64,000 bases of DNA from Macrostomum hystrix (Eukaryota; Animalia; Platyhelminthes), in NCBI GenBank assembly GCA_950097015.1, contig CATNEN010000029.1, forward strand, positions 8,370,001 to 8,434,000. The letters run 5' to 3'. A program made the translations under genes and the position numbers. Below the pieces are notes generated by a model, which saw only the letters and a list, made by a program, of their open reading frames with translations, was not told the origin of the DNA and searched no databases. Shown here in pieces: positions 151-47,449 of this stretch; position 1 is the stretch's first letter; every line of letters begins with the position of its first letter.

Positions 151-837
151 GTCTGAGTCTATAACAATAAGTTTGAAAAGACTTCAGCCACCTGGCTATC
201 AGTAATTACACTGCTCAAAATCCGAACAAAACCCTCGCTGCAGTCCCGCAAGGTAGGCAGATGCAGTCGTGCTCTGTCGTGCTTAATTAGGCATCGAGAT
301 CCTTACCTTGAAGAGGCTGGGATTAAAGAAAAATATGAGAAAAATGGGTGAGAAGAAGATGAGCAGAGCCCCAGACAGATCAGACAACGACAAAACGTGA
401 AAGAGGGATAGAAAGACGGGGGAGCATTCACCTGGGAGGGCAGAAGCAGCAGGAAGGGAAAAACCGGCGGCGATGTGCGGCTTCTCATTCCAGACTGGCT
501 CAGTTTAGGTGGGTGGAGGGGTGCAGTCTCGGGACAGACTCGCGCTGCACTCTCATCTCATCTGGGCTGAGCTGAATCTGCCACACAGTTTCTCGTGTCG
601 CGTCGGCTGCAAAATCTATATTAAAAAAAATCACGGCTTAGCTACTGCGTGGCAACGGGGATCGGAGCTACGCGCGGGCGATGAGAAAGGCGAGAGCAGG
701 GAGGCAAGGACCGCGCCCTATTAATTAGAAAAATCAACTGACAGCCAGGTTGAGGCTAAAGAATTGAAAATGGTTTTGTTTTTGCGAATCTAAATAAAAA
801 CAGCATCAAAAATTTAAATTGGATTCGCAATTCTCAC

Positions 838-2321
838 CTTGTCGCCAGTTTTTAACACCTTAACTGGAATCTTTGTTAGGGCCTTCTTCGCCGCGGTGCC
901 AAGTCGACGCTGAAAGTACAGGCGGATAATAAGGGATGCGCTTTTATAGATTACTTGTAAAACAATAGAATGCTTTAAAAACAATGTAAGTTCAGACAGC
1001 TTGATCCATTTTGTTAAGTCATATCGATGAAAATATTTGTCCAGTTGAATTTGATAGAATACAGACAGGAACTGAGCATAAACACACAACACCCGAGATG
1101 AGGGTAGAGAACACTGCGTCGGCTTAGATAGGAAGACGGAAAACAAGGATGCAAGGATGCGTCGGAAAAATACTCCCCAAAGTTTATCCAAAGTTCATCC
1201 AACAGTTTCCCATATGGGACAACATCCACGAGATCAGGGGCCCACGTGATTTAAAATCAAAGTCATCATGTCCCAGATGTCAAAATCATACAAAAGTTTC
1301 TCAATTGCTTCGAATTAGAGATTAAACATACCATTAATGCACCCCTCCCCAAATCCCCCATTGATGTCCATTTGTCAAAGTGCGATTACAGTACAACACA
1401 GAAAGACTATCAAGGCACAGGAGAATGAAGAAATCGACTAACCGACAATCGCTCCTTTGCGTGCAGATAGCGGAACCGCTGTACGTAGTAGAAGATAAGC
1501 CAGGACAGACTAATAACCATCAGCAGGATGAACGACACGGACACAAACAGCACGGACGTCTTGTTGATAAGGCCGTCCGGTCCGATGGCCCGAAATGTGT
1601 AGCCAACGGTGCAGCTGCGATTCGGCTGCAACAGCTCGGACATCAGCTGGCGCGCCAAGTCAAGCTTCTCATACAGAGCCACAGGCAATGGCGGCGGCGG
1701 CGGTGGCAGCCCGAAGGTGGCAGCCGGTGGAGCAGCAGCGGCAGCAGCGGTGGCCGCAGCCGAGGCCTCCTCTTCAGCCTTGGCGCTGCCAGGCGGAGCA
1801 TTGTAGACAAGCAGCAGAGAGACGTGCGGCACTAGTCGGCGAACAGCTTCAATAGTGGCGCCGACGCCGCAGTCGCCGACGTCAGCGTAGACAACTAGAC
1901 AGTCGGCAGCTCTGGCGGCAGCGAGGGTGACTTCGGGCGTAATCAGGCGGGCGTGGTGGCAGTTGGACCTGCTGACTGACAACGGAAGCAGCACAGCTCC
2001 ATCGCCAGTGAGAGTGTGCGCCTCCGGCTGCTGTCGGCGCAGCCAGCTCATGCGGTCCGACGGCATCGGCTGCGGTGGCGTTGAAGAACGCGGTGGAGGC
2101 GGCGGCGGTGGATCGACATCGAAGGCGCGGCCCTGCGACAGGGCCGGGCTGCAGCTGAAGACGAGCTTGAATTCATCTTGCAGCTGGCGACTCCGCTGGT
2201 AGTGAGCGGCCGACATGAACTCCGGTCGCTGGGAGACTTCACTGCGGCCCAAGTGAGACTCGCCAAGAGCAGTCGGCAGCAACAATAACAGCATTGGGAT
2301 AAGGCAGGCAAAGGAGCGCAT
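838..2321 (-). CDS. Goliath/RNF130/RNF150-family PA-TM-RING E3 ubiquitin ligase, 5' part (exons 2321-1443 and 909-838); RING exon(s) not found, probably left of the window
   Basis: Signal peptide [22 protein letters not shown]-like region, then TM segment [42 protein letters not shown] phase-0 GT-AG intron joins it to [24 protein letters not shown]. These match the remembered goliath-family juxtamembrane motifs. Confidence 0.88.
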
Positions 2322-4339
2322 GTTGACCAGCTTGGTTAAAAATAGTTGATGGGCAAAGTTGCTGGAAAAGAAGCCGAAGTCGCTATTTAAAACTAAAAAC
2401 TACTACTTAAAATATCCAGCTTGCTTTTTTATATTTTATCTGTACATAATGCCCACAAAAAAGGATAGGTATATAAAATAAATTTACCATTTAAAAGCTT
2501 TAGGAAACAACAATACTTAGACATTTAGATTTCTATAGATGGTAAGTTATAGTCTATCATAGATTATTATATATATAGGACCTTAGTATGTAATAGTACA
2601 TTTTTTATTTAACAATTTTTTGCCTATCATTACATTGGCTGGTGAAAACTATAAACTACCATTCAAAAAGTAAACATCTTTTTAAAATGTCTAATTACAT
2701 AGATTAGGCAAGAGTCTTCTTTATAGAATTGAAAATTTCCAAAAAAATAAAAAAACGATGTAAAAAAATCTTCCTGTTTAATAGGTGGAACATTATAAGC
2801 AAAAATGTAATAAAATAGGAAATTATTTTTTTGTAAAGAACGAACCTTGTTCCTTTTATACAATCTTCAAGTTCCAGGCTCTGAGAATTGTTTTAATTAG
2901 CTTAATACTACTAGAATAAAGGTTCCTGCAGTGCAGCGCAGGTAGACCCAGACAGTAAGGCCTGTATATAATTTTATTTTTAATCACTGGATAAAACCTG
3001 ACTAGGTAGCTTTTATATCTCTTAAGCTAAAGTAAAAAGTAATAATAAGTTATTTAACAAATTATTACAAAACAGTCGACATGATTAATGGAACCAAACT
3101 CACAGTCTAACATTTACTTTAGGTCAATATAAAATATATTTATATCGATAAAAAAACTCAGACTTTTTGTAAGTCAAAACGGGTCTATTTCTAGCTACTG
3201 AAAATAACAAATAATTGTGACGTGACAAATTATTTTGCTATAAAAACGACAGAATTAAACTTAGTTTACTATTCTTTTTACTCAGTTTCTTTCAGAAACA
3301 TTAAAAAACAATATTATTTTCGTCCTTACGCCAGACTTTTTGTTATCACGCCCAGTGCATGGGATTTGTCAGTTGTAGATGTAAAATATATGTAAAAGAG
3401 AATAATATTAGTACATTAAATCACTGATGAGTAAGCAGTTTTTTCTCATGAGTACTGAATGTAAAATTAATTACATCTTCTGGAAAACGTTAGGCATTTT
3501 TACTTCGCAACATGCATTGGCAAGACAGGCAAGTTGTTTTTCGAAAGAAAAGGTTGCTGTTTTTTTGCATCGCTAACTGTATACAATGATGTTATTCTAA
3601 TTTGGATTGTTACATCCTATTCTGTTATTTGTCCCATTGTTGCGTCATGATGTTTTTTAGATATTTTGTATTTTGATAAAGTTGCCAGTAACCATGTCAG
3701 CAAGTTCCCCTTATTCAACTGTTTTAAGTCACGCTTTCTTTTTCTATTATGGTCTTTATTCATATTTCACGTCGTAATTTGATAACTTACGTCGGTTAGC
3801 ATGTCTCATTTTCTGCTAACAAAGATGTGCTAAAAGCTCTAAAAGCTATATCTCTAAACGTAATTATAGCGATTCCCAGCAGTATCTAGAGTTCGTCTTT
3901 ACATGTATTGTGCAAGCTTAATTGCAGATTTACACAAGATGCATTAAAACTGACTCAAGACTGTATTAAAGAATGGCAGAGTAGTTTAATTATTTTTCTT
4001 TATGTTATGAATAACAAACAACAAAAATGCCAAGATGGCAGCAAAAAAGGTGTGATGCGCAAGTTAATAAATCTGGTAAAAAAGCTGAAACAAAAAATGC
4101 GACGCAAGTAAACAGAGTGGGCACCCCAAAATAAGCTAGACCGAAGACAGGAAAGCACAATAACAAAAAATACTTAAACTCGTACTTTGGAGTTACGATT
4201 AGCATTATGCGATTCCGGCATTGACTTTAAAAGCTTTTCTTGTTTCAAAAATGGGACTAACATTAAAGTGGCAATACAACAGATGCAGTTACTGATTAGC
4301 TACCAATCAACAAAAAATTACGAAAAACATTTTTGTTTT

Positions 4340-4490: not shown

Positions 4491-7400
4491 CTACGATGCA
4501 CCAGGCGTTTCAGCAGCTTCGGCCGCTGCAGCGTCGTCTGGCGCGATGTCAGCGATGCCGTCATTCACTCTGGGCTGCGGCGGCGCACCTTCTTCGTCAT
4601 TATCGTTGTCCTCCTCGGCGTCCTCCGAGGCCATCAGGAACTCGCACAGGGCGGCGCGCAGGCCGACGGGACAACAGTTGCAGACAGAGCGAGCCGTGCG
4701 AATCAGGCGGCCTAGGCGGCCGAGCTGCGCCACGGAGGCGGGCGACATCGATTCGCAGCCGGGATGACAGACGCAGCGGAACGGCTGACGCCAAGATTCC
4801 AGGCGGAGGCGGACACGGTGAGACTGGCGGGTGAGCGATGAAGGCAGGCCTTCATTATTTCAATGCGATAGTCTTACAATCAGAACATTTCTGATTGAAA
4901 ATATAGAAAAGTTTTTCAACGGTTATTTCCGCTTCTTGACTACCCAACAGTGTTTCAATGGTCGCTGCCATCTTCTTGACTACCCAACAGTGTTTCAATG
5001 GTCGCTGCCATCTTCTTGACTACCCAACAGTGTTTCAATGGTCGCTGCCATCTTCTTGACTACCCAACAGTGTTTCAATGGTCACTGCCATCTTCTTGAC
5101 TACCCAACAGTGTTTCAATGGTCGCTGCCATCTTCTTGACTACCCAACAGTGTTTCCATGGTCAATGCCATCTTCTTGACTACCCAACAGTGTTTCAATG
5201 GTCACTGCCATTTTCTTGACTACCCAACAGTGTTTCAATGGTCGCTGCCATCTTCTTGACTACCCAACAGTGTTTCAATGGTCGCTGCCATCTTCTTGAC
5301 TACCCAACAGTGTTTCCATGGTCGCTGCCATCTTCTTGACTACCCAACAGTGTTTCAATGGTCACTGCCATCTTCTTGACTACCCAACAGTGTTTCAATG
5401 GTCACTGCCATCTTCTTGACTACCCAACAGTGTTTCCATGGTCACTGCCATCTACTTGACTACCCAACAGTGTTTCAATGGTCGCTGCCATCTTCTTGAC
5501 TACCCAACAGTGTTTCAATGGTCGCTGCCATCTTCTTGACTACCCGACAGTGTTTCCATGGTCGCTGCCATCTTCTTGACTACCCAACAGTGTTTCAATG
5601 GTCGCTGCCATCTTCTTGACTACCCAACAGTGTTTCCATGGTCGCTGCCATCTTCTTGACTACCCAACAGTGTTTCAATGGTCGCTGCCATCTTCTTGAC
5701 TACCCAACAGTGTTTCAATGGTCAATGCCATCTTCTTGACTACCCAACAGTGTTTCAATGGTCACTGCCATCTTCTTGACTACCCAACAGTGTTTCAATG
5801 GTCACTGCCATCTTCTTGACTACCCAACAGTGTTTCAATGGTCACTGCCATCTTCTTGACTACCCAACAGTGTTTCAATGGTCACTGCCATCTTCTTGAC
5901 TACCCAACAGTGTTTCCATGGTCGCTGCCATCTTCTTGACTACCCAACAGTGTTTCCATGGTCGCTGCCATCTTCTTGACTACCCAACAGTGTTTCAATG
6001 GTCGCTGCCATCTTCTTGACTACCCAACAGTGTTTCCATGGTCGCTGCCATCTTCTTGACTACCCAACAGTGTTTCAATGGTCGCTGCCATCTTCTTGAC
6101 TACCCAACAGTGTTTCAATGGTCAATGCCATCTTCTTGACTACCCAACAGTGTTTCAATGGTCACTGCCATCTTCTTGACTACCCAACAGTGTTTCAATG
6201 GTCACTGCCATCTTCTTGACTACCCAACAGTGTTTCAATGGTCACTGCCATCTTCTTGACTACCCAACAGTGTTTCAATGGTCACTGCCATCTTCTTGAC
6301 TACCCAACAGTGTTTCCATGGTCGCTGCCATCTTCTTGACTACCCAACAGTGTTTCAATGGTCACTGCCATCTTCTTGACTACCCAACAGTGTTTCCATG
6401 GTCACTGCCATCTACTTGACTACCCAACAGTGTTTCAATGGTCGCTGCCATCTTCTTGACTACCCAACAGTGTTTCCATGGTCGCTGCCATCTTCTTGAC
6501 TACCCAACAGTGTTTCAATGGTCACTGCCATCTTCTTGACTACCCAACAGTGTTTCCATGGTCACTGCCATCTTCTTGACTACCCAACAGTGTTTGAATG
6601 GTCGCTGCCATCTTCTTGACTACCCAACAGTGTTTCAATGGTCGCTGCCATCTTCTTGACTACCCAACAGTGTTTCCATGGTCGCTGCCATCTTCTTGAC
6701 TACCCAACAGTGTTTCCATGGTCAATGCCATCTTCTTGACTACCCAACAGTGTTTCCATGGTCAATGCCATCTTCTTGACTACCCAACAGTGTTTCCATG
6801 GTCAATGCCATCTTCTTGACTACCCAACAGTGTTTCCATGGTCGCTGCCATCTTCTTGACTACCCAACAGTGTTTCCATGGTCGCTGCCATCTTCTTGAC
6901 TACCCAACAGTGTTTCAATGGTCGCTGCCATCTTCTTGACTACCCAACAGTGTTTCCATGGTCAATGCCATCTTCTTGACTACCCAACAGTGTTTCCATG
7001 GTCAATGCCATCTTCTTGACTACCCAACAGTGTTTCCATGGTCAATGCCATCTTCTTGACTACCCAACAGTGTTTCCATGGTCGCTGCCATCTTCTTGAC
7101 TACCCAACAGTGTTTCCATGGTCGCTGCCATCTTCTTGACTACCCAACAGTGTTTCAATGGTCGCTGCCATCTTCTTGACTACCCAACAGTGTTTCCATG
7201 GTCAATGCCATCTTCTTGACTACCCAACAGTGTTTCCATGGTCAATGCCATCTTCTTGACTACCCAACAGTGTTTCCATGGTCAATGCCATCTTCTTGAC
7301 TACCCAACAGTGTTTCCATGGTCGCTGCCATCTTCTTGATCCCGCAGTCCGCCATAATGAACACCAACCTGGTGGGAGGAACGCCGGGTGCGCCAGGGCA

Positions 7401-8620
7401 GGATATTGTGGCAGGGGAACACGAACGGCCGCATGTAGCACAAGTCATCCATGCGGCACAATGTAAAGTAGGCCTTCTCAATTGGGCACAGTTCAGCCAG
7501 CTGCCGGGGAGATTTTTCAGCCATAGAGCGCAAAGCGGCCAGAGTGCGGGCGCAGTCGATGGTTCGGTCGAATCGCAGGACGCAGTAGCCCAGGTTGCCG
7601 CGGCCGGTGGATTCGGTGGCGCCAAAGTCTGACGCTGTCGGAGCGAAGACGCTGCGAATCTAAAATTTGAAAGTAAAATAAATTAACTATGAAATCAATG
7701 CGAGCAACCATTTGACGAAGGTACTCGTAGTGGCCTAGCGTTCCTAGATGACATAACTGAAGGGCTAGATTAATAGGCAGATATGGGCGAGGCCATTTTC
7801 AGTCATAAATCAGTCATATATCTGTCATTTTATGGGCCCAAATTCGAACTTCGGACCTTTCAGCTAGGAGTCCGAGGCTCTAACTACTGTGCTACGAGTT
7901 TAACACTGGTAGTGACCAAAATTGAAAGACTCAAAAAGTGACAAAAGCCAACAAACCAACCTGCGAGAAGCGTCCCAGAAACCGCCTAGCAATATCCGCT
8001 GAAGTTAGACTGGCGTGAATATTCCAAACCAGAATAAACTGACACCTGGCCGAGCAGGCGTCAGGCACCGGGCAGAACGGAGCCAGCCCCGGCCTCAGGC
8101 CAGCCAGACGGAGGCTTTCATCGCCCCATTTCTTTAGGCGCAGCTGCGGACTGCCGGGCAGGCTATGGGCCAGCCTCTCTGTGCCAGCCTCGGCCCAGCG
8201 CCTTGACACGGACACTGGCAGGCGTAGTATAGCCAGGCGGCTAGATCCACTGGCGTGCCTAGTCAGGTACAGATTGGCTGTCAGTTTATTGGTGAATGTG
8301 ACCCTAATGGCGTCCAACAGAGCGGCGGCGTCCATTTCGATTGGTAGGCCGAGCAGTCGCCAGCTGCGGAGAGCCGATTGCGGCCGGCACAGGCACCACT
8401 GCACATCGGCCGCATTATTCGATTCAGCAGATTCTGACCGGTCGAAATCCCTATAGTCATGGTCTAGAGCGTTCAATAGTTCAGCGTTATCGTAGCGACT
8501 AACCGGACCGGTCACAGACGAATCCGGCGATGATAGCCAGGCTGCAGTGACCTCAACTGGGACCACTTCTTCGCTAGTCTTTAGTAGGTCGGACAGATGC
8601 CTGCGATGGTATGGGGCCAT
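4491..8620 (-). CDS. RRM + Cys/His-module protein, paralogue A (~427 aa; exons 8620-7961, 7659-7369, 4823-4491)
   Basis: All three exons join in phase 0 with GT-AG sites. The splice reconstitutes an RRM (FILVWNI...RFSQ|IRSVFAP...NLGYCVLRF) and the motif PFVFPCHNILPW...|...PFRCVCHPGC, which aligns with paralogues B and C. Acidic C-terminal tail. Confidence 0.8.
4932..7338. repeat. 40-bp minisatellite, ~60 copies, filling intron 2 of paralogue A
   Basis: Unit tcttcttgactacccaacagtgtttc(a/c)atggtc(gc/ac/aa)tgcca with exact 40-bp phase throughout. Confidence 0.98.
7838..7895 (-). mobile_element. Degenerate tRNA-like SINE head in intron 1 of paralogue A
   Basis: Minus strand gtagcacagtagttagagcctcggactcctagctgaaaggtccgaagttcgaat shows an A-box/B-box layout similar to SINE family 1. 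Confidence 0.55.
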
Positions 8621-8709
8621 TGTGTTTACTTTTGATAGTCGATATTTTTATCTCGATTGTCTATTTAACCCAAGTCAAATATGCGCAGCTTTTGGATTCG
8701 CCCGGCAGC

Positions 8710-8810
8710 TACCATTGGTCACACTGTAGGACGAAATAGCTATCACGTGACAGCGCTGAGCCAATAGCTACCGCTCGTATATGTGCCACATCATAACCAG
8801 CCAATAAAAG
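8710..8810 (-). promoter_or_regulatory. Possible proximal promoter of paralogue A (CCAAT boxes, TCACGTGA E-box)
   Basis: CCAAT/ATTGG at about 8713, 8761 and 8801, and palindromic TCACGTGA at about 8743, 90-190 bp upstream of the ATG. These are short motifs and could occur by chance. Confidence 0.3.
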
Positions 8811-8879
8811 GGCCGCGTGATTCTCATGGTCATCCTTCATTGTTTAATTTGTTCGTAGAAAAGAACAGTCTTGCAATTT

Positions 8880-9150
8880 TTGGGTTTGAGACGCAATATG
8901 CACATCATATGGCACCATTTCGCTGCATCCTGAGCACACGCACACATACTGTACGCAGACACACGCTGACACAAGTGTGTACAAACTGTGCCTTGGAGGT
9001 TGGCCCTCGAGGCCGTAAATTGCACGAAAAACACTAAGCCTTCTCTCCGCGACTGCGCCCTAAATAAATTAAATGTGGCCTCGCCGCGTAGTCGAGATTG
9101 GGGACCTTGGTGCGAGAGGCAAATGCGGTAGACCGCTCCGCCACTCACCA
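8880..9150 (-). mobile_element. tRNA-derived SINE family 2 copy
   Basis: Reverse complement matches the copies at 38282 and 56915 (head ggtgagtggcggagcggt...gcctctcgcaccaaggtccc; body gtacacacttgtgtcagcgtgtgtctgcgtacagtatgtgtgcgtgtgctcagga). Confidence 0.8.
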
Positions 9151-9334
9151 CTAATTAACTAACTAACACCACTAATCTTTAGGGTATTAAGTTACACAGC
9201 AGTAAATTTCATCACCTGTACAAATCTTTATATATTATATTTCCTCCTAAGGCTCCATACAGCAGATCAGTCTGTAAACTGTGGGGGAGGCGGCCGCTAA
9301 AATTTCAACCCCAGTTAGAAATAGAACAGAGGCA

Positions 9335-9410
9335 ATAGGAATCGTTTCCCTGGGACTGAGATTCGAACCCCTGACCTTTGTGTTATATAATTCTAAAGCT
9401 TCAACCGCAG
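9335..9410 (-). mobile_element. Degenerate tRNA-like SINE head fragment
   Basis: Minus strand gcggttgaagctttagaattatataacacaaaggtcaggggttcgaatctcag has a B-box GGTTCGAAT and resembles family 1. Confidence 0.45.
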
Positions 9411-9412
9411 GA

Positions 9413-12278
9413 CTACAAGCAGCGACCAGACCTGAGCGCTTGAACCGAGTCACCAACTACAGGCAGTTCTTGTCGAAGCCGGGTCGCTAACCAGTCGAAC
9501 ATCCCACCAGCCGGCGCCGACGGCACAGCCGCAGGATGGCAGGGGCACATGAACGGCGATCCGGATCCGCAGAAGTCGATCTGGACGTCCAACGGATTCT
9601 CGCTGTGCTGATTGGCGTCAGTTAACCAGGGCAGTAAGTTGTGACAAGGGAATGTGAACATCGGTGTCACCTGCCAGGCCTCCTGACAGGAGTGGATTCA
9701 AACAGTGGCGCGAGCGAACGCGTGTTAAAGAGATTTAGATTGAAGAAAATCCTATTTGCAAGATTTGCAATCCACGAGTAAAGCTTAATTCCAACTATGT
9801 ACTGGCCATCTGGCCGATCGACTTCGTTTAATTATAATTATCACCATTGACCACTTTTTAAGCACCACGATTGACATTTTAGCGTTCCGCTTACCTGCAA
9901 GTGGGCAAAAGTGAATCGCACCAATGACCAGTGGAAGATAGCAACTAGAATTTGACAGGCTGCCGCCTTCAGCACTCCCATAGCGTGCTGACAGTCAGTA
10001 GACTTATCAAATCGGGCAATAAGAAAGCCACAATTGCGATATTGTAAATCGCTGCCGGCAATCGCAGGCGACAATCGTGGACAGTAGAAACTGCGCACCA
10101 TTGGTAAAAATCTATGAGCCCGATGTACAATAGTATTGGGCTCCATATTCAACGGCAGATTCCATATCATCAGGAACACCTGAATGATAAGCAAATGTGT
10201 AAGGCACTTTGGTGAAAAGATTATCGTGGGTTTGTTTCATAAAAAACAGACCCAAACGTAGCCCTTTACCGGTTGAAATTCTGGGCCGGCAGTTGTAATA
10301 AGAGGCAGGAAGCTGCAACCGAAACTGTCGGGCGATCTACTAGCGTAGCCATCGGCTTCAAAAGTCTCCGGGCGCACAATTGTAATCTTCACTGGTCGCT
10401 TTTCGCGATCCAGCAGGTTCTGGCACCGATAGAATTCAATTAAACTAGGGGCGGCCGCCTCGATGGCTTCAACAGTGGCGGCCGGGTCCAAGACGCACAG
10501 TATAACTTTGCCCCATTCGGGCTCAACAGATAGTATAGTATAGGCGGTCAGGATTAGTGGGGACAGGCGGTGAATTGTCAGACAGGCTAGCTGCTCCGAG
10601 TCGGCGCTTAGTCGCAGGCCGACAATACGCAAGTACGGCTGCTGCAGTGGGGTGAGTCGGCATTGATTGATTACTAAACCATTGATTATGCGGCGAGTGT
10701 GGACTAAATAGAATAAGAAACTGTGATGTCAATACAGGCAGAGAATCGGAGTGACAGCAGAGAAGCTGGAGTGCCACTATAGCAACTTGAGTGCCACTAT
10801 AGCAGCTGGAGTGCCACTATAGCAGCTGGAGTGCCACTATAGCAGCTGGAGTGCCACTATAGCAGCTGGAGTGCCACTATAGCAGCTGGAGTGCCACTAT
10901 AGCAGCTGGAGTGCCACTATAGCAGCTGGAGTGCCACTATAGCAGCTGGAGTGCCACTATAGCAGCTGGAGTGCCACTATAGCAGCTGGAGTGCCACTAT
11001 AGCAGCTGGAGTGCCACTATAGCAGCTGGAGTGCCACTATAGCAGCTGGAGTGCCACTATAGCAGCTGGAGTGCCACTATAGCAGCTGGAGTGCCACTAT
11101 AGCAGCTGGAGTGCCACTATAGCAGCTGGAGTGCCATTATAGCAGCTGGAGTGCCACTATAGCAGCTGGAGTGCCATTATAGCAGCTGGAGTGCCATTAT
11201 AGCAGCTGGAGTGCCATTATAGCAGCTGGAGTGCCACTATAGCAGCTGGAGTGCCACTATAGCAGCTGGAGTGCCACTATAGCAGCTGGAGTGCCACTAT
11301 AGCAGCTGGAGTGCCACTATAGCAGCTGGAGTGCCATTATAGCAGCTGGAGTGCCATTATAGCAGCTGGAGTGCCAAAATAGAACTCAGGAGAGACTGGA
11401 ATGCCTGTGGTAAGATGATGAAGCCAATAGAACTGGACAGCTTCGGACAATTGTAAGCCGAATATAAGCTAAATATACGTTTGTTCAGTTGGATTTACCT
11501 GACCAGGAGTCACCTGCCACAGCGGCTGATCTATTGGGATCGACAAGCAAGGCCGCTTACTAAGGACTGTCACCGTATCTTTCTCTGCGTCATCTTCTTT
11601 CTTATTGGTTACTTGATGCTGATTCTGTTGCTTCTGTACAAGTGGGGCGCTTAAAGGCAAAAGCGTTGCCGCGGTCACCGCCCAGAGGTCGTAGGCTCGC
11701 GCCCCGGCCTCGGCTAGACGACCAGCTAGTCGAATCCGATCTGCGCCAGGCGACAACAAGGTCAGAGCGGTCGCCGAAGCGACATTCGCTAGATTCGCTG
11801 TCGGCGGCGGCAGCGGCGCCAAATCGGCAACATCGGCGGATGGCCAACAGTCGGCCAGTCGCATAGCGTCTGGATCGTCCCAAATGGCCAGCAGTAGGCC
11901 GATCTCATCAAGAGCCCCTGCCGGCGGCTGGCTCATTGACTCACCAGTGTGCAGGTAGAGCCGACAGGCGCCAGGACCCAACTCGGCTAAGACAGCCGGC
12001 CATTGTTCGGACTGCAAAGAGTCGAATAGCAGCACAGTATGGCCCCCAAGCTTAGTCGAATATCTCACGTACTGCCTGTAGGTGGTCCCGGTGCTATCTA
12101 CCGGACAACCGTCTTGCAGTAGCACGAAGTCGGATAATATTGTAATAGTATTTTCCTCACTTTCTGGACTGTTATCAGCTTCTTCTGTAAGATTCGAAGA
12201 ATTACCACCGCTTATATCCTCGGTGGACACATTGACAGCGGTCTGATTCTCTTTATTATTGTTTGTGTCTGCCTGCAT
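9413..12278 (-). CDS. RRM + Cys/His-module protein, paralogue B (~568 aa; exons 12278-11499, 10641-10270, 10179-9895, 9682-9413)
   Basis: Four phase-0 GT-AG joins. The spliced junction WQVTPGQ|QPYLRIVG aligns gap-free with WYISSGLETYYVVSG in C. RRM FLMIWNLP...YRNCGFLIARF; motif PMFTFPCHNLLPW...SPFMCPCHP. Confidence 0.8.
10760..11375. repeat. 20-bp minisatellite, ~31 copies, in intron 1 of paralogue B
   Basis: Unit agcagctggagtgcca(c/t)tat. Confidence 0.98.
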
Positions 12279-13338
12279 ACCACGCGTTATCTGTTTGTTC
12301 TTTGAAACCTAAGAATATGTTGGGGCTGCAAATTGAAAAGGTGTGGAATAGTTTAGCAATGATGTTGTTTTTCAACATCGAAACATGAAGCAATTTAAAA
12401 AGCTACCTACTTAGTTTATGCTTAGTATATTTTTTCTCGGAAGACATTCGAGTTTTTGACCCTCTCAACCGTCTTCACAAAAAACTTCTCTGGCCACTTC
12501 TTAGAAAATTAATTGATTTATGAAATAATACAATTGCTCAATTCGACACAGCAGGCTCTACTGTCATTTTAACCAAATCTAACTAATAGACTCTAAAATA
12601 TACTTTACTCTACTCTGTAGTCAGTATAATGTCGTACAAGGCGTACTGTGTAATCTACTTTATTATGCTCTTCTAGTATGCGAAAATAGGAACACAAAGA
12701 CTGCACTTTAACAATATCCTTTTAAGTTCACAAGAGATTAACAAACGCATTTGCTGTCAGTAAAACAAGTTTACTAAAAAATTATGCGCCCATAAAAATT
12801 ATGTTTAATGGTATTAGATTACAATTAACAGCGCATGACAATTCACATTCCAAAAAACTGTTCAAATTTTAATCGCGCATTTGATAGCAAACAGCGGGAA
12901 AAACATGCTGGTACAAAATCGATGAAAAAATGGAACGAATGTTTGTCTTTGAACAACAAAATCGCTAATAAACACCAAGGCAATTCAGAAAACTGCAAAT
13001 TTATTATAAGGTATGCAGCAGAAAGACTGCCAGCTATTATACATTTAAACTAATTTATAGATGTATCTTATTATGATTGTAACACTTTCTGCAATTGAAA
13101 ATGTTGATTTTTATGCTCGTATATATATATATGACTTCTAGATTGCAGATCTAAAATGAATGCTTTAATTTTGAATGGAAATTCTAAAATTTATTTGTTG
13201 GTTTGTTTTCTCTCCGTTTTACTAATGCCAGTTTAGGTGGAAAATTTTTAAGATTGTGTCACAATATAACCGACAAATCAGTCAATAATTAAACTTAGTA
13301 ATGAAACAATGCATAAACCGGGAAAATCATGAAAGAGA

Positions 13339-16300
13339 TCAATAAAAGCTGACATTGTCCAAGTAGGAGCGCAGATTAGCACGCACAGTCTCTACCGGAT
13401 ACGCCGCCCTAGCCTGGTGCAGCAGTTCAGCGAATTGCACAAATCTTTGATAACCCGGAGCGGCCTCTTCGCACACTGGATGGCAGGGACAAGCGAAAGG
13501 CGATTTGTCCATAACACAACGCTGCGTATCGGGATCAACCGAGGCAACCCACGGTATGAGATTGTGACACGGAAAGCTGAACGGCGGCACGTGACAGATT
13601 TCGCGCATATTTGCCGCAATGAAGCGCACTTTAACTAGCCAGGCTTTGTCGTCCGTCAGGTTCTGTGGTTTCTTTTTAACAAGATTTCGCAAATAGTCTC
13701 GGTTGTGAGCGCAACGCTTACAGGCCTCTCTAGGCTCGCACTGGAATCGTATAACGCAGAAGCCGCAGTTCTGATTCGGACGAATCGGATCGCGCGGCAC
13801 GTGAACGCTGCGCATTTTAGGCAAGAGTTCACGCAGGCACTTCATTAGCTGCGAAATGGGCAGGTCGGTTGGCAACTCCCACAGTAACAGAAATGGCGCA
13901 TCTGCTTTGGTTGGCCAAAAGAGAAACCTGTCCGGTAGGCTGGAGGCGTACTCGTGACACGTACCGGTGCTGTATTCGCGGAAGCACAAACTGGCGGCTA
14001 CGGGGTTGAGTTGAGTCTTGCACGTGCGTTGCAAACCTTCTGCTGTTAATGCATGATTCGCAGTGCTAATCGGCATTTTTAGGATCTGCTTTTCGGCTGC
14101 CGCAGTAGCAGTCAATTCTTTAACTTGGACTGGAGCCTCCGTGAACGGCTCGGTTTGCTTTACAACTTTGTTAGGCTCAACCAATCGAACGACAGCTTCT
14201 AGCACAGATTTGACGACATTTTGAACGATTTCTGCTACGTTATCATCAGCTTCCTCTGACAAAAAATCGAAATATGCAATAGGCGCTCGAACTGTGGTGC
14301 TGTCTTTATTGCTTACCCCAACTGACTCTTCCGAAGCTGATGGTGCATTCTCTACGCATTCCAAACCAGTATTAGCGGCTGCTGCATCAAGTGGCTTTGG
14401 CTCAGCCGAACGTTTAGTCTGGTTAATCAATGCTGACTCACAGCCTGTATCATTTACAGAAACGATTGTACTGGTCTCTTCATCTGCAACCGCCTTTAGC
14501 ATTTCTTCTTCTGCTATCGCAACGGCACTACTAATAACATCATGCATTTCAATGACTTCGCTTTCTCGACAGTTATTTTCATCAGTTGCCTTTGCAGCTT
14601 CTAAATAGCCAGTTGCCTCAAATGCGCTGCTTGCAGGAATTCGGTCATCAACTGTATCAAACAACGCTTCAATTGGATCGGATGTTAAATCCTTGTCGCT
14701 TGCATCTGCAATGTTGGCGCCAGATAGACTAGGATCCGCAGTGTTAAACAATTCATCCGCGGTTATCATAGAATCAGCTAGCATGGTTAAATGCTTGGCA
14801 TGCGCAGTTTCATCGATGGAAGCTATATTAGCTTCCGTTGCAGCGACGATGGAAATTGCCTTCTTAGGATTTTCTTCCGCTGTCTCTACAACCCTATCGA
14901 CTCGACTTTCGGTCTCCGCTGAAACAGAAACTTCGTTAGGATTATTTACTTCCACTGCGACCGTCTTAAGATCCTCGCCTGTCTCTTTTGCTAGCTCTGG
15001 ACTTGCGACTTCGGAATCAGTTACTTGAACGGGTTTCAGCTCTTCAGCACGTTGGCTAGGAGCGCCAGTGGATACGTCGGCAACAACCTCTTCATCTTCT
15101 GTTGATTCCGCTTCAGACTCCACTCTAAATTCAGCATCCGTATCTGGCATTCCCTCGATCTCAGAATCTGATGCATCGCAGTCGCCATCTGACTTGACTA
15201 GAAGCTGTTTTTTCAACATAACCTCAATCTCACCTTCTGGTAGCGATCCTTCAAAATTGATTGACGCTTGGTTATTGGAATTAGCTGAGAGTTCACTTGA
15301 AGTCTGCACAGCCATCACGGCAACATTGCGAGCTACTTGTTTCAAATAATCAATAGATAGAGTTTTACCATCCATAGGTGCCAAAACGGCGGCATAAGAG
15401 CCAGTAGATGGGTGCACTGCGACGTAGCAACTACATTGACAGTTTAATAATAAGCTTTCCAGGCGTTCTCCAACCCAAGCGCAGTTAACATCAGCAGGGA
15501 AGCCAGAAACAACGTAATAAGTTTCCAAACCGCTAGAAATGTACCAATTATCGGATCCAGAAGCACCAGTGGAAGCGGCGGGTACAAAAGAACCAATGGC
15601 TGGCTGCTTGTTTAGTGAGTCAGCCTGTTGAAGCATTTTTAGGCCTAACAGGAACAGGTTAGAATCCTTTGCTCGTTTGTTGTCGAATTCATTACGTTGT
15701 CTTTTTCTATCGGGAGACTCTTTGACTGATCGCGACGGCGGCTTAGGCGACAAGCGCGCACCGTTCGGTTCATGGGTCAGAGCAGAAGCTGCAGCAGCGG
15801 CAGCGAAAGCGGATGCTGATGCAGTGGTAGTTCGCTCTGAGTGACGCGAAGAGGACTCAATAACTCGACTTCTAGACGAACTACTCGGTGACTTGGACTT
15901 TCCAGAGTCGCCGTGACGACGATGTCGAGGCGACGTATTTCTTGAACGAGACCGGTTGCCATGACGATGCCGAGAGCTGCTAGTCCTTCGCTCTGAACGA
16001 TCATCATAGCGATCCCGACGGGATTTCGATCTTGATTTTGATCTATAACGATTGCTTGAGAGACGACGGTGCGAATTGCTCCGCGAGCTGGAGCGGCTGG
16101 CCTTTCGCCGATCCGAAGAACTCGGAGACCTAGATTTGTTGCGTAACTGCTGACGAGCACGGCTCGGTGAAGACCGCCCGGAATCAAAGCGGTTCGATCG
16201 GCGACTGCTATCTTCAGGGGGACAGTCCACCCAACGCGATGTAGTTCTGTTCTGCTCTTGAAGCATCTGCTGCTGATGCTGAAGCATCTGCTGCTGCTGT

Positions 16301-17352
16301 TGCAGTCTTAACTGATGCTGGTGCCAAGCAGCAGCCTGCTGTGCTTGTGCCCCGTAGGCGCCGCCATAGGGCATCGACATCGGTACTGGTTGAGGAGGAT
16401 AGTTGAATTGATGCTGGCCAAGCGTTGCCGCAGGGGCAATAACGGCTGATAAAGGCGCTTGCCAATAAGGCGCCATCATGGCGGCTTGCGGCGCGTTGAT
16501 CGGATAAGGCATCGGAAAGTGTGTAGGAAATGCGAAAGGTGCTTGCTGATAGGGCATTTGAGGATAAGGATAATGTTGGTGAGGCTGGCTCATTATCATC
16601 ATCTGAGGTGGCTGTTGCAGCTGAGGTGGCGGGGTGGGCGGTGGCGAATCAAGTGCCTCCGACGGTGCCCATAGTTCGAACACGGAGAAGCCTTCTGGCG
16701 AGGAGCTCAATCGGTTGATAATTTCGAATCGTTCTGCCGAGCCAGTTGCCTCGCTTGGCAGTCTCACAAAGGCGGCCCTAGCATCGCCTAGACGTTCTAC
16801 AATTCGCACATCGCCAATAGGAATTCGTCCGCCCGCGGCAGTGTCAGCCAAGTCCGCCTCTGTTAGCTTGTCGGGCAAATTGTAGAGAAAGACAAAATTT
16901 AAACGACGCTTATCGACTGGCTGGCGACTACCGCCGGTGCCACTCTGAATGTAAACTGGACAGGCGACGCAGCGGGCGGACAAATGACGATAAGTATCTT
17001 CCCACTGGCTGGCGTCCAGCTGATCGAAAAGAGTCACACAACAGCTGCCCGGTAGCTCGGCAGAGTTGCGCACACGCGAGCCCAACGGTTCCAATAGTTC
17101 CCTAAGTTCGCAAGTGATTCGACGCAAGAATACAAAATCTGATTTAACCAGCTCCAGATCATCGGCGCTGCTTCCGGCACCGCCGGATGATGATGCGGCA
17201 GCTGCTGCCGCCGCTGCGGCACCTGGCCGCTTATCTGGCGGCAGCATGCGTTCCTGATGACGCTTGCCAAGCATGTGCACTTCGTAGCCTTCGCGCGTCA
17301 TCATGCCAACAGAGCACAGGTCGCAGTAGAATGGAAAAGAATCGCGATCCAT
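13339..17352 (-). CDS. Intronless ~1337-aa protein, paralogue C: matrin/U1-like C2H2 zinc finger, degenerate RRM-like domains, Q/P-rich and RS-rich regions, acidic linker, C-terminal RRM + Cys/His module
   Basis: 4-kb uninterrupted ORF. FYCDLCSVGMMTREGYEVHMLGKRHQ (Zn finger); RS dipeptide tract; RRM LLLWELP...RSVHVPRD...NCGFCVIRF; motif PFSFPCHNLIPW...SPFACPCHPVC. First ATG at 17352 (the track used TTG at 17358). AATAAA on the minus strand at 13190-13195. Confidence 0.9.
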   Translation of the reverse strand: MDRDSFPFYCDLCSVGMMTREGYEVHMLGKRHQERMLPPDKRPGAAAAAAAAASSSGGAGSSADDLELVKSDFVFLRRITCELRELLEPLGSRVRNSAELPGSCCVTLFDQLDASQWEDTYRHLSARCVACPVYIQSGTGGSRQPVDKRRLNFVFLYNLPDKLTEADLADTAAGGRIPIGDVRIVERLGDARAAFVRLPSEATGSAERFEIINRLSSSPEGFSVFELWAPSEALDSPPPTPPPQLQQPPQMMIMSQPHQHYPYPQMPYQQAPFAFPTHFPMPYPINAPQAAMMAPYWQAPLSAVIAPAATLGQHQFNYPPQPVPMSMPYGGAYGAQAQQAAAWHQHQLRLQQQQQMLQHQQQMLQEQNRTTSRWVDCPPEDSSRRSNRFDSGRSSPSRARQQLRNKSRSPSSSDRRKASRSSSRSNSHRRLSSNRYRSKSRSKSRRDRYDDRSERRTSSSRHRHGNRSRSRNTSPRHRRHGDSGKSKSPSSSSRSRVIESSSRHSERTTTASASAFAAAAAASALTHEPNGARLSPKPPSRSVKESPDRKRQRNEFDNKRAKDSNLFLLGLKMLQQADSLNKQPAIGSFVPAASTGASGSDNWYISSGLETYYVVSGFPADVNCAWVGERLESLLLNCQCSCYVAVHPSTGSYAAVLAPMDGKTLSIDYLKQVARNVAVMAVQTSSELSANSNNQASINFEGSLPEGEIEVMLKKQLLVKSDGDCDASDSEIEGMPDTDAEFRVESEAESTEDEEVVADVSTGAPSQRAEELKPVQVTDSEVASPELAKETGEDLKTVAVEVNNPNEVSVSAETESRVDRVVETAEENPKKAISIVAATEANIASIDETAHAKHLTMLADSMITADELFNTADPSLSGANIADASDKDLTSDPIEALFDTVDDRIPASSAFEATGYLEAAKATDENNCRESEVIEMHDVISSAVAIAEEEMLKAVADEETSTIVSVNDTGCESALINQTKRSAEPKPLDAAAANTGLECVENAPSASEESVGVSNKDSTTVRAPIAYFDFLSEEADDNVAEIVQNVVKSVLEAVVRLVEPNKVVKQTEPFTEAPVQVKELTATAAAEKQILKMPISTANHALTAEGLQRTCKTQLNPVAASLCFREYSTGTCHEYASSLPDRFLFWPTKADAPFLLLWELPTDLPISQLMKCLRELLPKMRSVHVPRDPIRPNQNCGFCVIRFQCEPREACKRCAHNRDYLRNLVKKKPQNLTDDKAWLVKVRFIAANMREICHVPPFSFPCHNLIPWVASVDPDTQRCVMDKSPFACPCHPVCEEAAPGYQRFVQFAELLHQARAAYPVETVRANLRSYLDNVSFY

Positions 17353-17612
17353 GCTCAAAGTGGTTTTTTAAACAAGAAATTCTACTGCGCTGTGGGTTCA
17401 CACAGTTGACTACAGGGCGAGCATTTCGAGTTTTGATGAGTTTAGGTTAGGGATTAAGTTGGATGGTTGCTTTTGCTCTTTTCTAATGGCACCTGTGTTT
17501 AAGTCCTGAAAGTGAAGATGGGTGGCAGCTTGAAGGAGCTAGAGAAAACTTTGTATGATAATTTAAAAAGTATTGCCAACTAATGGCCTTAATTACTAAC
17601 ATCCTAATTGCC

Positions 17613-24586: not shown

Positions 24587-27500
24587 ATGCTCGAAATGCT
24601 CACAGTGCACCTCAGCCTGGCGCAGAACACGGCACCGACATTCAAGCAGTGCAGTGGCTTGAATGCCGCCTACGTGACCGGGGACTGCGGCTCGATACTT
24701 CAGATCAAAGAGGAGGTACCGATTGGTATGTGAATTCCGTATGACTGAGTATAAACACAGGAGGGGAATCTCAGCAAACTGTGGAAATTGTATTATTACC
24801 TGCGAGCTGTTGTAAAGCCACGTAACACACAGCTACCAAAAGTGCCCGTTTAGCAGATGGATCTGAAAGTACACCTGACTCTCTTTCTCACTACAGATAC
24901 GCCTCTGTTTACTGTGGAAGCAGCTGACGCGGAGGGAGACGATGTTGAGTTTACCCTGATGGGGGAAGCAACCCTGTTGTACTTACTGAAGCTCCGGGCG
25001 GACAAGGTCTCTCGAAGCGCTGCCGTTATTGTCAACAGTCGAATCGACAGCGAGGTTTGGGCTGCACTTTTCGCTCTCTTGTTTGATTATATTTTCCTAA
25101 AGCTATGAAATCACTGTTCAATCGGTTCATCGACTTCCACAGAGTCTGAGCAACCCTGTTGCCAACCTTGTTCTGCGGATGAACGATCTGAAAGGCAACG
25201 TGAGTTATTTCCTTGAAGAAAAAATGCAGTTATAGGTGCAAATGACACTTTTTAACACTTATTCTCTCTTTAAAAATGTGTAATCAAATTTAATTTAAGT
25301 TAATCGAGAAGACAATCACTGTGTACATTGTGGATCAAAATGATAATCCACCGGAGCTGCAAAATCTACCTTACCGATGGGAAGTTCCCGAGGTAATGAA
25401 ACTCTTACATGATCTAGTAACATTTTGTATGAGATCACTGCTACATGCAGTTTATTTACTTGTTATTTTTTAATGCAGAGATAACTTTTTCAGCCGTTTT
25501 CATTGCTTCCAGAATACATTGTGGACGTCGCAGACGAGTTTCAATGTCACAGTGCTCGATCGGGACAAGACGCCCAGCAGCTACCGCTTCACCTATGTGG
25601 TATGCTCCGCACTCTGCGTACACTGTGTACTTCTATTGATTTTCTTACTATAAATTACTGAGCCATTCGTATCCCTTAATTTTCAGGTAAACTCGGCGGT
25701 GAGTGGATTGATGAAGCTCAGTTGACGAAGCTTAAGCTTACCTTAAATGCTAGTAATTACTGAGACTACAGAACGCGGGAGCCGAACATGATAAAAATAT
25801 TTGATTTATAACTACGAGTTACAAATGCAGAAAAAGTTAATGAAGTCTGTCAACAGCTGTTTTTGTAGCATTATACGCTCGTATATTTACTTTTATTGGC
25901 CTTCATTTGAACTAATCGTTGAATTGTGGTCACTTTACGGTGACAAAGTATAAAAACAATCGTTATTTTAAATGATTCATTCTCAATCTTTAGTCCACAG
26001 CCTCAACGACAAATCTGTTCAACGAGACCTATCGCGTTACTAGAGGTCTCACTACGGGGACAATGTACCTGAGCACAGTGTCATTAATTCAGCCTCTGGA
26101 TTACGAGAGCAACCGCTTTTATCAGGTGTCCGTCTTTGTGACTGAAGGAATTTTAGGAGGCAAGAACGCATCAACAGATATTGTGGTAAGCGTCCTGGAC
26201 AGACAGGACACTCCACCGGTGTTTGATGGCACGCCTTACTTGGTCTCTGTGACTGAGAACTCACCCGTAGGCACGCTGGTAATGACAGTGCTGGCTAGAG
26301 ACGGTGATCGCGGTGTACCAAATCCAGTGCAATACCTGCTAGACAATAGTTCAGTCCTAGCCGAGCTGTTCGCGTTGAACAGCGCAACCGGTCGACTGGA
26401 GGTCGCCCGCAACATAGATCGTGAGAGCGCCCAGATAGCCGCAGTGTATGCCAGCTTCAGCTTGCAGGTGATCGCCGAAGAAATCTCACCTGACAGTCCG
26501 CAGCCGGCCAACTTGTCGCGCTCGTCGTCACCAGTGCGCATCACCGTTCTAGATGTGAATGACGTGACGCCTAGTTTTGGTCGATCCGAGTACAATGCCA
26601 CTGTTCTAGAAAACACGGCGGCAGGAACGCCAGTAGCTTTACTGACCACTTGCACTGTAACAGATCTGGACGAAGGTGACAATGGCGCCTTTGAATTGTC
26701 AGTAAGCCTTGGTAACGGGAGCGCGTTCGGAGTATTTGACGTTTTGCCCACTAGTGCCATTGGCACCGCAGCTCTGACAGTTCGGGTCAAGGACAGCGCC
26801 GTTTTAGACTACGAAGTAACTAAGAGCATTAAATTTCAGGTGCGCAAGAGAATCCTATATAGCTAATGCTTTTTCAAACTGTTGCGCCACCTTGTTTAAC
26901 TAAGCCTGATATCCCTGCCTTGCGCATTTTGTATGATGCATTTCAGATAGTGGCTAGAGAGTCCAAAACTACAGCGCGGCTGTCGTCGACCGCCACCTTC
27001 ACTGTATTTCTATTGGATGCTAATGACAATGCGCCCAAGTTCAATCTGTCCAAGTACGCGTTCAGCATCTTCGAGAATTCGCAAAATGGCACGTTTGTCG
27101 GTCAGGTCTCGGTAAGATGCTCTTTCGAATCAATTATGACACCAATACTTAAGACTGAGCATGCTTGCGCTTTTAACCCGATTGTAATTTTTACTCATTT
27201 TAGGCTTTTGATCTTGACAGTGGAGATCTCGGAAGAATTGTGTACAGCTTGGGAGGCACTGATGCATACAAGTGAGCAGCTTATGGTTCTAAATAGGCGT
27301 TAGAATACAAAAAATAATGTTTTCTTCCTCGATATAAAGTCGCTTGAACTATTGGCTAGATTTCAGATCAACAGCATCACTGGTCACATCCACGTTGGTG
27401 TCAGAGCCGACGAGGACCTCAGTCTGCTGGACAGAGAGAGGTTCCCTATTCTGTACCTGACTCTCCAGGCTACGGATGGTGGCGGCTTGACCGGCCAGTC

Positions 27501-35453: not shown

Positions 35454-35714
35454 ATGAGCTGAATGTCTGGATGGGACAGACTCGCGCGCTGTAGTTTGAA
35501 ACTACGAACGGAGGCCCGCCGGTCGTTAACTCTGATTGCTAAAATGTCTTTTTGCCTGAAAATTTGCACTGCTTTCTAAATCAAAATTTCAGCATGCATG
35601 ATGAGTAACGTAAATTGTGTTTTACAAGTGGGCTCTCGTGCGGTCTGTGTGTTTTCTAGCGTATTTGACTGTGCTTTAATTATTTCGGTTTGTTTTCTTG
35701 TTCAGTCCTAGTGG

Positions 35715-47105: not shown

Positions 47106-47408
47106 CTACATGTCGCGAAATATGCCGGCGAAAGTTTTTCTCAGATTTTTCATCGTGTCCTCTTGATCCTCAGCGTTTGCCGGCCGAGCTCCGTCGCCGC
47201 TTTTGCCAACAGCCGATGCGGCCGACATTTGACGCGGCGGCGGTGGCGGACGCTGCGGGGGCGTCGGCGGCGGGGGCGTTGATGTCGTTGACGGCTCTGA
47301 CGCCTCGGCGGCAGTTGATGACGTGGGCGCCTGCTGCTTCTGTTGCTGCTGCTGCTGCTGAGCTGAGGATCCATTGTTTGCAGACCCAGTTGATGCGGTG
47401 GACTGAGC

Positions 47409-47449
<41 letters not shown>

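What the first reader, a model, noticed from the sequence alone, without database searches (positions are those of the whole stretch)
4491..17352. Tandem cluster of three divergent RNA-binding paralogues sharing an unrecognised RRM + Cys/His architecture
Seen: three consecutive minus-strand genes (A ~427 aa, B ~568 aa, C ~1337 aa), visible only after manual splicing, share two colinear blocks. The first is a degenerate RRM-like block (WQVTPGQQPYLRIVGL / WYISSGLETYYVVSGF / WCLCRPQSALRSWRLLGL). The second is a clearer RRM (FILVWNI..RSVFAP..NLGYCVLRF / FLMIWNL..RSFYCPR..NCGFLIARF / FLLLWEL..RSVHVPR..NCGFCVIRF) followed by a conserved Cys/His module. Established: RRMs have RNP2/RNP1 strands like these. 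Inference: an old, lineage-specific family of RNA-processing proteins; the nested architectures (C > B > A) suggest a full-length regulator plus truncated partners or competitors. I cannot assign it to a known family.
Basis: partly seen in the sequence, partly recalled or inferred. Interest (0 to 1): 0.85.

Follow-up and report, generated by a model that had tools for sequence, protein, structure and literature searches.

The report
Macrostomum multi-RRM family with Cys/His tail
The stretch holds two flatworm genes, not three, from a small family found so far only in Macrostomum. Their proteins carry worn-down RNA-recognition domains joined to an unrecognised cysteine/histidine tail that probably binds zinc, and they are most likely nuclear RNA-processing factors.

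Summary
The shared blocks are real, but there are two genes. 'B' and 'A' are one 7-exon gene (BA, 983 aa), joined by an intron at 9431-8601. The M. lignano orthologue (BOX15_Mlig000637g3) is one protein, 49% identical; five introns match in position and phase, and the sixth matches once its 1-nt gap is allowed for. C (1337 aa, one exon) and the order C-BA-RING gene are also conserved there. The repeated unit is a domain pair plus a Cys/His tail: once in C, twice in BA. An AlphaFold model of a family member (pLDDT 82, pTM 0.85) gives two beta-alpha-beta-beta-alpha-beta folds, the second RRM-like (Z about 9), and an unmatched tail. Three Cys and two His are invariant in 11 copies; two of the three RNA-stacking aromatics are absent. 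C adds a U1/matrin-type zinc finger, two more probable RRMs and an RS region. A profile search of 1.8 billion proteins found only M. lignano relatives. Best reading: a lineage-restricted nuclear RNA-processing family built like Matrin-3/RBM20/ZNF638. RNA and zinc binding are inferred. The 'truncated competitors' idea fails. The scan noted this stretch before (s1-384951), not on other DNA.

The parts
13339..17352 (-). Gene C, single exon, 1337 aa
   Evidence: Open frame; M. lignano orthologue of 1292 aa, single exon, 47% identical end to end
17257..17325 (-). C: C-x2-C-x12-H-x5-H zinc finger of the U1/matrin/jaz type (aa 10-32)
   Evidence: Pfam zf-C2H2_jaz E 5e-4, below its cut-off; ligands invariant in four family members; aa 1-45 are 96% identical to the orthologue, dN/dS 0.03; Prp9 finger E 5e-4
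16942..17151 (-). C: N1, probable degenerate RRM-like domain (aa about 68-137), shared with BA and two other paralogues
   Evidence: Alignment; 79% identical to the orthologue, dN/dS 0.06; fold inferred from pattern and an Atlas lead below 0.9, not modelled
16663..16908 (-). C: N2, probable RRM (aa about 149-230); the only one keeping Phe at both RNP2-2 and RNP1-5 by manual register
   Evidence: Alignment; 82% identical, dN/dS 0.07; not modelled
16258..16647 (-). C: Gln/Pro-rich low-complexity region (aa 236-365)
   Evidence: 22% Q, 20% P; same composition in the orthologue
15823..16215 (-). C: Arg/Ser-rich region (aa 380-510)
   Evidence: 33% S, 27% R, 24 RS/SR dipeptides; also in the orthologue and in paralogue P0003
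15283..15552 (-).
   Evidence: Leave-C-out profile E 3.5e-4, orthologue 9e-9
14023..15255 (-). C: acidic, poorly conserved region (aa about 700-1110), apparently inserted inside the module's first domain
   Evidence: Net charge -57, 34% identity; leave-C-out profile resumes after it; exact split point uncertain
13612..13899 (-). C: second RRM of the module (aa about 1152-1247)
13342..13611 (-). C: Cys/His tail (aa 1248-1337) with P-C-H-N and C-x-C-H motifs
   Evidence: 81% identical to the orthologue, dN/dS 0.04; invariant residues
11499..12278 (-). Gene BA exon 1: ATG at 12278, degenerate N1/N2, start of module 1
   Evidence: N-terminus matches the orthologue's; intron conserved
10270..10641 (-). 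BA exon 2: first domain of module 1 (donor 10269 preferred; 10257 and 10251 also keep the frame)
9895..10179 (-). BA exon 3: second RRM of module 1
9432..9682 (-). BA exon 4: Cys/His tail of module 1
   Evidence: Acceptor 9683 matches the orthologue's intron position
8601..9431 (-).
   Evidence: Same position and phase as a 1078-nt intron with a GTAAGA donor in M. lignano; gapless protein match across it
7961..8600 (-). BA exon 5: end of module 1, linker, first domain of module 2, start of its second RRM
7369..7659 (-). BA exon 6: rest of the second RRM and P-C-H-N motif of module 2
4491..4823 (-). BA exon 7: C-x-C-H motif, terminal helices, acidic tail, stop
   Evidence: Matches P0004 and locus L004 18150-18344
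4932..7339 (.). 40-bp minisatellite (60 copies) filling BA intron 6
10764..11376 (.). 20-bp minisatellite (31 copies) in BA intron 1

Best explanation
Two tandem genes, C and BA, belong to a small family of multi-RRM proteins found so far only in Macrostomum. The family plan is: U1/matrin-type zinc finger, two N-terminal RRM-like domains, a low-complexity or RS stretch, then one or two copies of a module of about 310 aa (two RRM-type folds plus a Cys/His tail). Shown: gene structure, family membership, module duplication older than the split between BA and paralogue P0003, purifying selection. Predicted: the module folds as one compact unit. Inferred: the invariant Cys (helix 2 of the second RRM), His (P-x-H-N) and C-x-C-H bind a structural zinc ion that fixes the tail onto the RRM. 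The module then offers a non-canonical surface (invariant Arg residues, a Trp and one Phe/Tyr) for protein partners or structured RNA, and not the classical base-stacking sheet. Inferred function: C is a nuclear pre-mRNA processing or splicing regulator that holds RNA with its zinc finger and N2 RRM and joins splicing assemblies through its RS region. BA has lost finger and RS region and would act as a two-module adaptor in the same pathway.
For: One-gene BA model, conserved introns and synteny. Family members and architectures. Model pLDDT 81.7, pTM 0.85 with two beta-alpha-beta-beta-alpha-beta folds. Second fold matches RBM5 RRM1 (Z 9.5, rmsd 2.0, 84 aligned), U1A (Z 9.3) and Hsh49 (Z 8.8). 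Five of the 14 invariant columns are Cys/His at a median 24% identity. dN/dS 0.03-0.07 in finger, N1, N2 and tail of C. RS regions in C and P0003. The M. lignano orthologue is expressed: Mlig000637.g3 has 12-81 reads per body fragment in PMC7336406 Table S8.
Against: No Pfam RRM model reaches significance for any block (best E 0.08). Two of three stacking aromatics and the RNP1 basic residue are missing in the module. The first fold of the module matches generic ferredoxin-like domains (MscS, rotavirus VP1, Z 7.7-7.9) as well as RRMs. N1 and N2 were not modelled. The model is of a paralogue, not of the window protein. No localisation, binding or knock-down data; no transcript data for this genome. 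dS is near saturation, so the ratios are rough.
Confidence: 0.5

Rival explanations
1. The family is the fast-evolved Macrostomum descendant of a known gene of the Matrin-3/RBM20/ZNF638 type, now beyond sequence recognition, with a secondarily added tail.
For: Same kinds of parts: matrin-type finger, RRMs, RS region (PMC12795506). Atlas feature neighbours of C's N-terminus include zf-met + RRM and 'Matrin-3-like' clusters at 0.82-0.84.
Against: Those scores are below the lead threshold and may only reflect the mix of domains. No such protein was found by the profile search or among solved structures. Only one finger, and the C-terminal Cys/His motif does not have matrin spacing. The top fold matches are RBM5, U1A and Hsh49.
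Confidence: 0.2
2. The proteins do not bind RNA. The RRM folds are pure protein-interaction platforms and the family works as a nuclear scaffold, for example in chromatin or silencing complexes.
For: 0 of 11 module copies keep the RNP2-2 or RNP1-5 aromatic. BA has lost finger and RS region and its N2 is degenerate. The two folds pack in an orientation unlike solved tandem RRMs (rmsd 12-19 A).
Against: The finger is of an RNA-associated type and nearly invariant. C's N2 keeps two aromatics. RRMs without the canonical sheet can still bind RNA through helices (PMC9958909; 10.64898/2025.12.13.694091).
Confidence: 0.2
3. The invariant Cys/His/Asn/Arg residues form a catalytic site (metal-dependent nuclease or Cys-His enzyme) mounted on an RRM pair.
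For: Five invariant Cys/His are one more than a single structural zinc needs; neighbouring Asn, Trp and two Arg are invariant too. The tail has no structural match.
Against: No invariant acidic residue; no deaminase H-x-E/P-C-x-x-C or Rieske C-x-H box; no enzyme among fold matches; tandem copies and low-complexity context fit an adaptor better.
Confidence: 0.07
4. One reading: three separate genes, with B and A as truncated partners or competitors of C.
For: B can be closed with an in-frame stop at 9413 and A opened with an ATG at 8620. The bridging donor in this genome (GTCTGG) is weak, so intron retention could give a short B-only product; read-through also hits a stop in M. lignano.
Against: The orthologue is one protein across the junction, with the same intron; the sequence in front of the acceptor is not conserved; intronless paralogue P0003 aligns to BA in one piece across the junction (752 columns, E 2e-84).
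Confidence: 0.03

Closest known systems
Matrin-3 / RBM20 / ZNF638 family
   Same: Combination of matrin-type zinc finger, RRM(s) and an Arg/Ser-rich region (PMC12795506); long acidic stretch as in ZNF638 (own knowledge).
   Different: No detectable sequence homology; one finger only; up to six RRM-like folds; C-terminal Cys/His tail of another pattern; module duplicated in some members.
Canonical RRMs (RBM5 RRM1, U1A/U2B'', Hsh49/SF3B4)
   Same: Beta-alpha-beta-beta-alpha-beta fold of the second domain, Z 8.8-9.5, rmsd about 2-3 A.
   Different: 12-16% identity; RNP2-2 and RNP1-5 aromatics and RNP1-1 basic residue absent; about 90-residue tail and a second fold packed against it.
RBM5/RBM10 RRM1-zinc finger unit (PDB 7pcv)
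   Same: An RRM followed by a metal-binding element; top structural hit.
   Different: Only the RRM part aligns (chain residues 4-89); the RBM5 finger is a four-Cys RanBP2 type (own knowledge), unlike the Cys..His..C-x-C-H set here.
Mei2-type RRM3 (Pfam RRM_2)
   Same: Top Atlas feature neighbour of C's C-terminal part (0.89); one M. lignano fragment is auto-named RRM_2 protein.
   Different: No RRM_2 hit in Pfam scans; score below the lead threshold; Mei2 proteins have no such tail (own knowledge).
SR-related proteins
   Same: RS region with 24 RS/SR dipeptides next to RRM-like domains in C and P0003.
   Different: The RS region is internal and absent from BA; best SRSF2 match is insignificant (E 0.7).

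Membership tests
RRM superfamily (second fold of the module) | Beta-alpha-beta-beta-alpha-beta fold of about 80-90 residues | tested here: met
   Model of paralogue P0003 756-1068, pLDDT 81.7; Z 9.5 to RBM5 RRM1, 9.3 to U1A
RRM superfamily (second fold of the module) | Aromatics at RNP2-2, RNP1-3, RNP1-5 and a basic residue at RNP1-1 | tested here: not met
   RNP1-3 Phe/Tyr in 10 of 11 copies; RNP2-2, RNP1-5 aromatic and RNP1-1 basic in 0 of 11
RRM superfamily (second fold of the module) | Significant match to a Pfam RRM model | tested here: not met
   Best RRM_1 E 0.082 in 2 of 23 rows; none for window exons
RRM superfamily (first fold of the module) | RRM fold as opposed to a generic ferredoxin-like fold | tested here: inconclusive
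   Topology predicted; best matches over residues 15-104 are MscS and rotavirus VP1 domains, Z 7.7-7.9; Foldseek aligns tandem RRM proteins over both folds
RRM superfamily (N1, N2) | RRM fold | not tested
RRM superfamily | RNA binding | not testable with these tools
   Needs CLIP or binding assays
U1/matrin/jaz-type C2H2 finger | C-x2-C-x12-H-x5-H spacing | tested here: met
   Pfam score 20.7 bits, just under the 22.6 cut-off
Matrin-3/RBM20/ZNF638 | Two matrin-type zinc fingers, one C-terminal | tested here: not met
   One finger in C, none in BA; tail motif differs
Matrin-3/RBM20/ZNF638 | Sequence homology of the RRMs to family members | tested here: not met
   No non-Macrostomum hit at E 0.001 among 1.84 billion proteins for the C-terminal block; no solved family RRM at E 10. 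Profiles were shallow, so very remote descent is not excluded
Matrin-3/RBM20/ZNF638 | Arg/Ser-rich region | tested here: met
   C aa 380-510 and P0003 300-400; absent in BA
Mei2-like RRM_2 | Pfam RRM_2 match | tested here: not met
Structural zinc site in the tail | Four Cys/His ligands within bonding distance of one ion | not testable with these tools
Indirect hint only: U1A residues 92-98 align to model 235-239 in some rows and to 264-276 in others
Rieske iron-sulphur motif | Box 1 C-x-H plus box 2 C-x-x-H in a Rieske fold | tested here: not met
   No C-x-H box, middle residue of C-x-C-H varies, no Rieske fold match

The most novel reading that the evidence does not exclude
The repeated unit is a new RNA-binding or catalytic module: two RRM folds locked in a new orientation by a zinc site built from one RRM helix and an unmatched tail. 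It recognises its target through a non-canonical surface and still assembles when a 400-residue acidic insert splits its first domain, as in gene C.
Probability: 0.3. Interest if true: 0.62.

Novelty: new variant of a known kind. Interest (0 to 1): 0.42.

Why it matters
It defines an unannotated family of at least five or six paralogues in a model flatworm, all listed as hypothetical or mis-named proteins, and gives it a confident predicted fold. The RRM-pair plus Cys/His module has no match as a whole in Pfam, the PDB or the ESM Atlas, so it is a concrete case of an old RNA-binding fold rebuilt in one lineage. It is testable, since RNAi and transgenesis are established in M. lignano. The reach is limited: no homologue outside one genus was found, and there is no phenotype or link to a standing question. 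The corrected gene model also matters for annotation: two public models of the locus are wrong (one fuses a retrotransposon, C and half of BA; one carries a frameshift).

Tried and rejected
Pfam scans of all exons and family members: only a weak zinc finger. Word-based search with C's C-terminal part at 330-1050 aa: nothing. PDB sequence searches: nothing significant for the RRM or tail blocks. Single-sequence AlphaFold of C's C-terminus: pLDDT 36, discarded. Metagenome contigs: two alignments were too divergent to search with; the single-protein scan found no relative. N1-N2 as an older copy of the module's domain pair: not supported (hhalign probability 2%). The segment after C's acidic insert is not significant alone against shuffles, so the split-domain reading rests on its position next to the second RRM. 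No further module copies in the window. No paper names these genes; four supplements lacked them. Rieske and deaminase readings of the motif were rejected.
Full report
Source. The closest relatives of everything in the region are Macrostomum lignano proteins at 42-69% identity, so the window comes from another Macrostomum species. An earlier scan note names M. hystrix (s1-278242); I did not test the species directly.

Observation. The C-terminal block is shared far beyond chance (BLASTP E about 1e-16; shuffle z 11-21). The middle block fails pairwise tests but passes leave-one-group-out profile tests. B and C also share an N-terminal block.

Two genes, not three. A profile of the C-terminal block found P0003 (BOX15_Mlig033299g2, 1072 aa, intronless), which carries a B-like and an A-like module in one chain. 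That pointed to a phase-2 donor at 9431 and acceptor at 8601. Joining them gives an open frame of 983 aa from the ATG at 12278. A targeted search then returned BOX15_Mlig000637g3 (P0018, 933 aa), which aligns to this model at 49% identity over 838 columns with no gap at the junction. Five introns lie at the same position and phase in both species; the sixth does so once a 1-nt gap in the M. lignano exon 6 is allowed for. Read in the frame of fragment P0004, the M. lignano protein would be 981 aa; a sister entry, Mlig000637.g6, is listed at 2943 nt, which is 981 codons. That g6 is the intact copy is my inference from the length. The same M. lignano contig has a single-exon C orthologue (1292 aa, 47%) upstream and the RING gene downstream, as in the window.

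Family. Among 1.84 billion representatives the profile found seven proteins, all from M. lignano. They are orthologues of C and BA plus paralogues P0003, P0005, P0006 and P0007. C, P0003 and P0007 begin with a C-x2-C-x12-H-x5-H finger and share N1 and N2 with BA. C and P0003 have RS regions. In a tree of 11 module copies, BA module 1 groups with P0003 module 1 (99/99) and BA module 2 with P0003 module 2 (94/98, just under the tool's threshold), so the internal duplication came before those two genes split; C is a separate one-module branch. BA is therefore not a truncated C. The profile was shallow and free-living flatworms are thinly represented, so 'Macrostomum only' is a statement about present databases.

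Structure. AlphaFold on P0003 756-1068 with a 23-row family alignment gave pLDDT 81.7 and pTM 0.85: two beta-alpha-beta-beta-alpha-beta folds (15-104, 134-220) and a tail of short strands and two helices. The second fold matches RRMs (RBM5 RRM1 Z 9.5, rmsd 2.0; U1A Z 9.3; Hsh49 Z 8.8). The first matches ferredoxin-like domains in general (Z 7.7-7.9). Solved tandem RRMs align over both folds only with rmsd 12-19 A, and the best Atlas TM-score is 0.39. The tail was not searched alone, so its fold is unmatched here but not shown to be new.

Conserved residues. Of 216 ungapped columns 14 are invariant at a median 24% identity; five are Cys or His: one Cys in helix 2 of the second RRM, the His of P-x-H-N, and C-x-C-H. 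Two further Cys are kept in 8-9 of 11 copies. This pattern is typical of a structural metal site (established knowledge; not measured). Canonical RRMs bind RNA by aromatics in RNP1 and RNP2 (PMC9958909). In the module, RNP2-2 and RNP1-5 are never aromatic and RNP1-1 is never basic; RNP1-3, a Trp in strand 1 (8 of 11) and two invariant Arg remain. C's N2 keeps Phe at both lost positions by manual register. Finger, N1, N2 and tail of C are under strong purifying selection (dN/dS 0.03-0.07, dS near saturation). In C, the first domain of the module appears to be interrupted by about 400 acidic residues; support is moderate.

Expression. No reads could be examined for this genome. For M. lignano, Table S8 of PMC7336406 lists Mlig000637.g3 (2799 nt, the length of P0018) with 44, 43, 12 and 81 reads in four body fragments, classed 'Tail', and g6 with 107, 100, 165 and 125, classed non-specific; neither carries a neoblast or germline label in Table S6. 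Counts are low and the copies are hard to separate, so I read this as low, broad expression.

Mechanism. Most likely (0.5) C is a nuclear RNA-processing regulator that uses finger and N2 for RNA, the RS region for splicing assemblies, and a zinc-stabilised RRM-pair module as a non-canonical docking surface; BA is a two-module adaptor without finger or RS region. Rivals: an unrecognisable Matrin-3/RBM20/ZNF638 descendant (0.2), a protein-only scaffold (0.2), a catalytic tail (0.07), three genes (0.03). The parts resemble the Matrin-3 family plan (PMC12795506), but homology and the second finger were tested and not found, so it is built like that family without being filed in it.

Verdict. A real, previously undescribed lineage-restricted family with an unusual module; new variant of a known kind; interest 0.42. 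Limits: model of a paralogue, no coordinates, no reads, one comparison species. The joined gene model was not used in any database search or fold; exons were submitted by reference.

Noticed in passing
window 812-2330, minus strand: Secreted/membrane PA-RING (goliath/RNF130-like) gene directly downstream of BA; its orthologue with RING Pfam hits follows BA in M. lignano locus L004.
   Followed up: partly
P0001 (UniProt A0A1I8I8L7): Public model named 'CCHC-type domain protein' is a fusion of a retrotransposon gag-protease piece (1-460), the C orthologue and the first half of the BA orthologue.
   Followed up: yes
L004 about 17525-17535: The M. lignano assembly copy behind BOX15_Mlig000637g3 has a 1-nt gap in exon 6 relative to P0004 and the window, which shifts the last 53 residues out of frame; assembly error or damaged homeologue not decided.
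   Followed up: partly
window 9682-9660, minus strand: In this species module 1 of BA has Trp where nine other copies have a Cys (E-x-C motif), so one of the second-tier Cys is dispensable.
   Followed up: partly
L001 10001-13219 and window 13339-17352: C and P0003 are intronless, while BA, P0007 and P0010 have introns at different positions; retrocopying or independent intron gain.
   Followed up: partly
window 12300-12340, minus strand: A strong pyrimidine-rich acceptor lies about 50 nt before BA's ATG, about 1 kb after C's stop; it could be a 5' UTR intron or a spliced-leader acceptor in a C-BA operon-like unit.
   Followed up: no
window 25994-30490, plus strand: Multi-exon cadherin gene (Pfam Cadherin E 1e-32).
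   Followed up: partly
window 34429-35454, plus strand: DUF5524 gene (Pfam E 8e-18), C7orf57-like from memory.
   Followed up: partly
window 35700-61600: Dense run of unrelated minisatellites (periods 4-54 bp), with short possible coding pieces between them, e.g. 41672-42520 plus and 47109-47447 minus, neither with a Pfam hit where tested.
   Followed up: no
P0010 aa 70-330 (L003): One paralogue carries a long acidic tandem repeat N-terminal to the module, recalling the acidic region of C.
   Followed up: no
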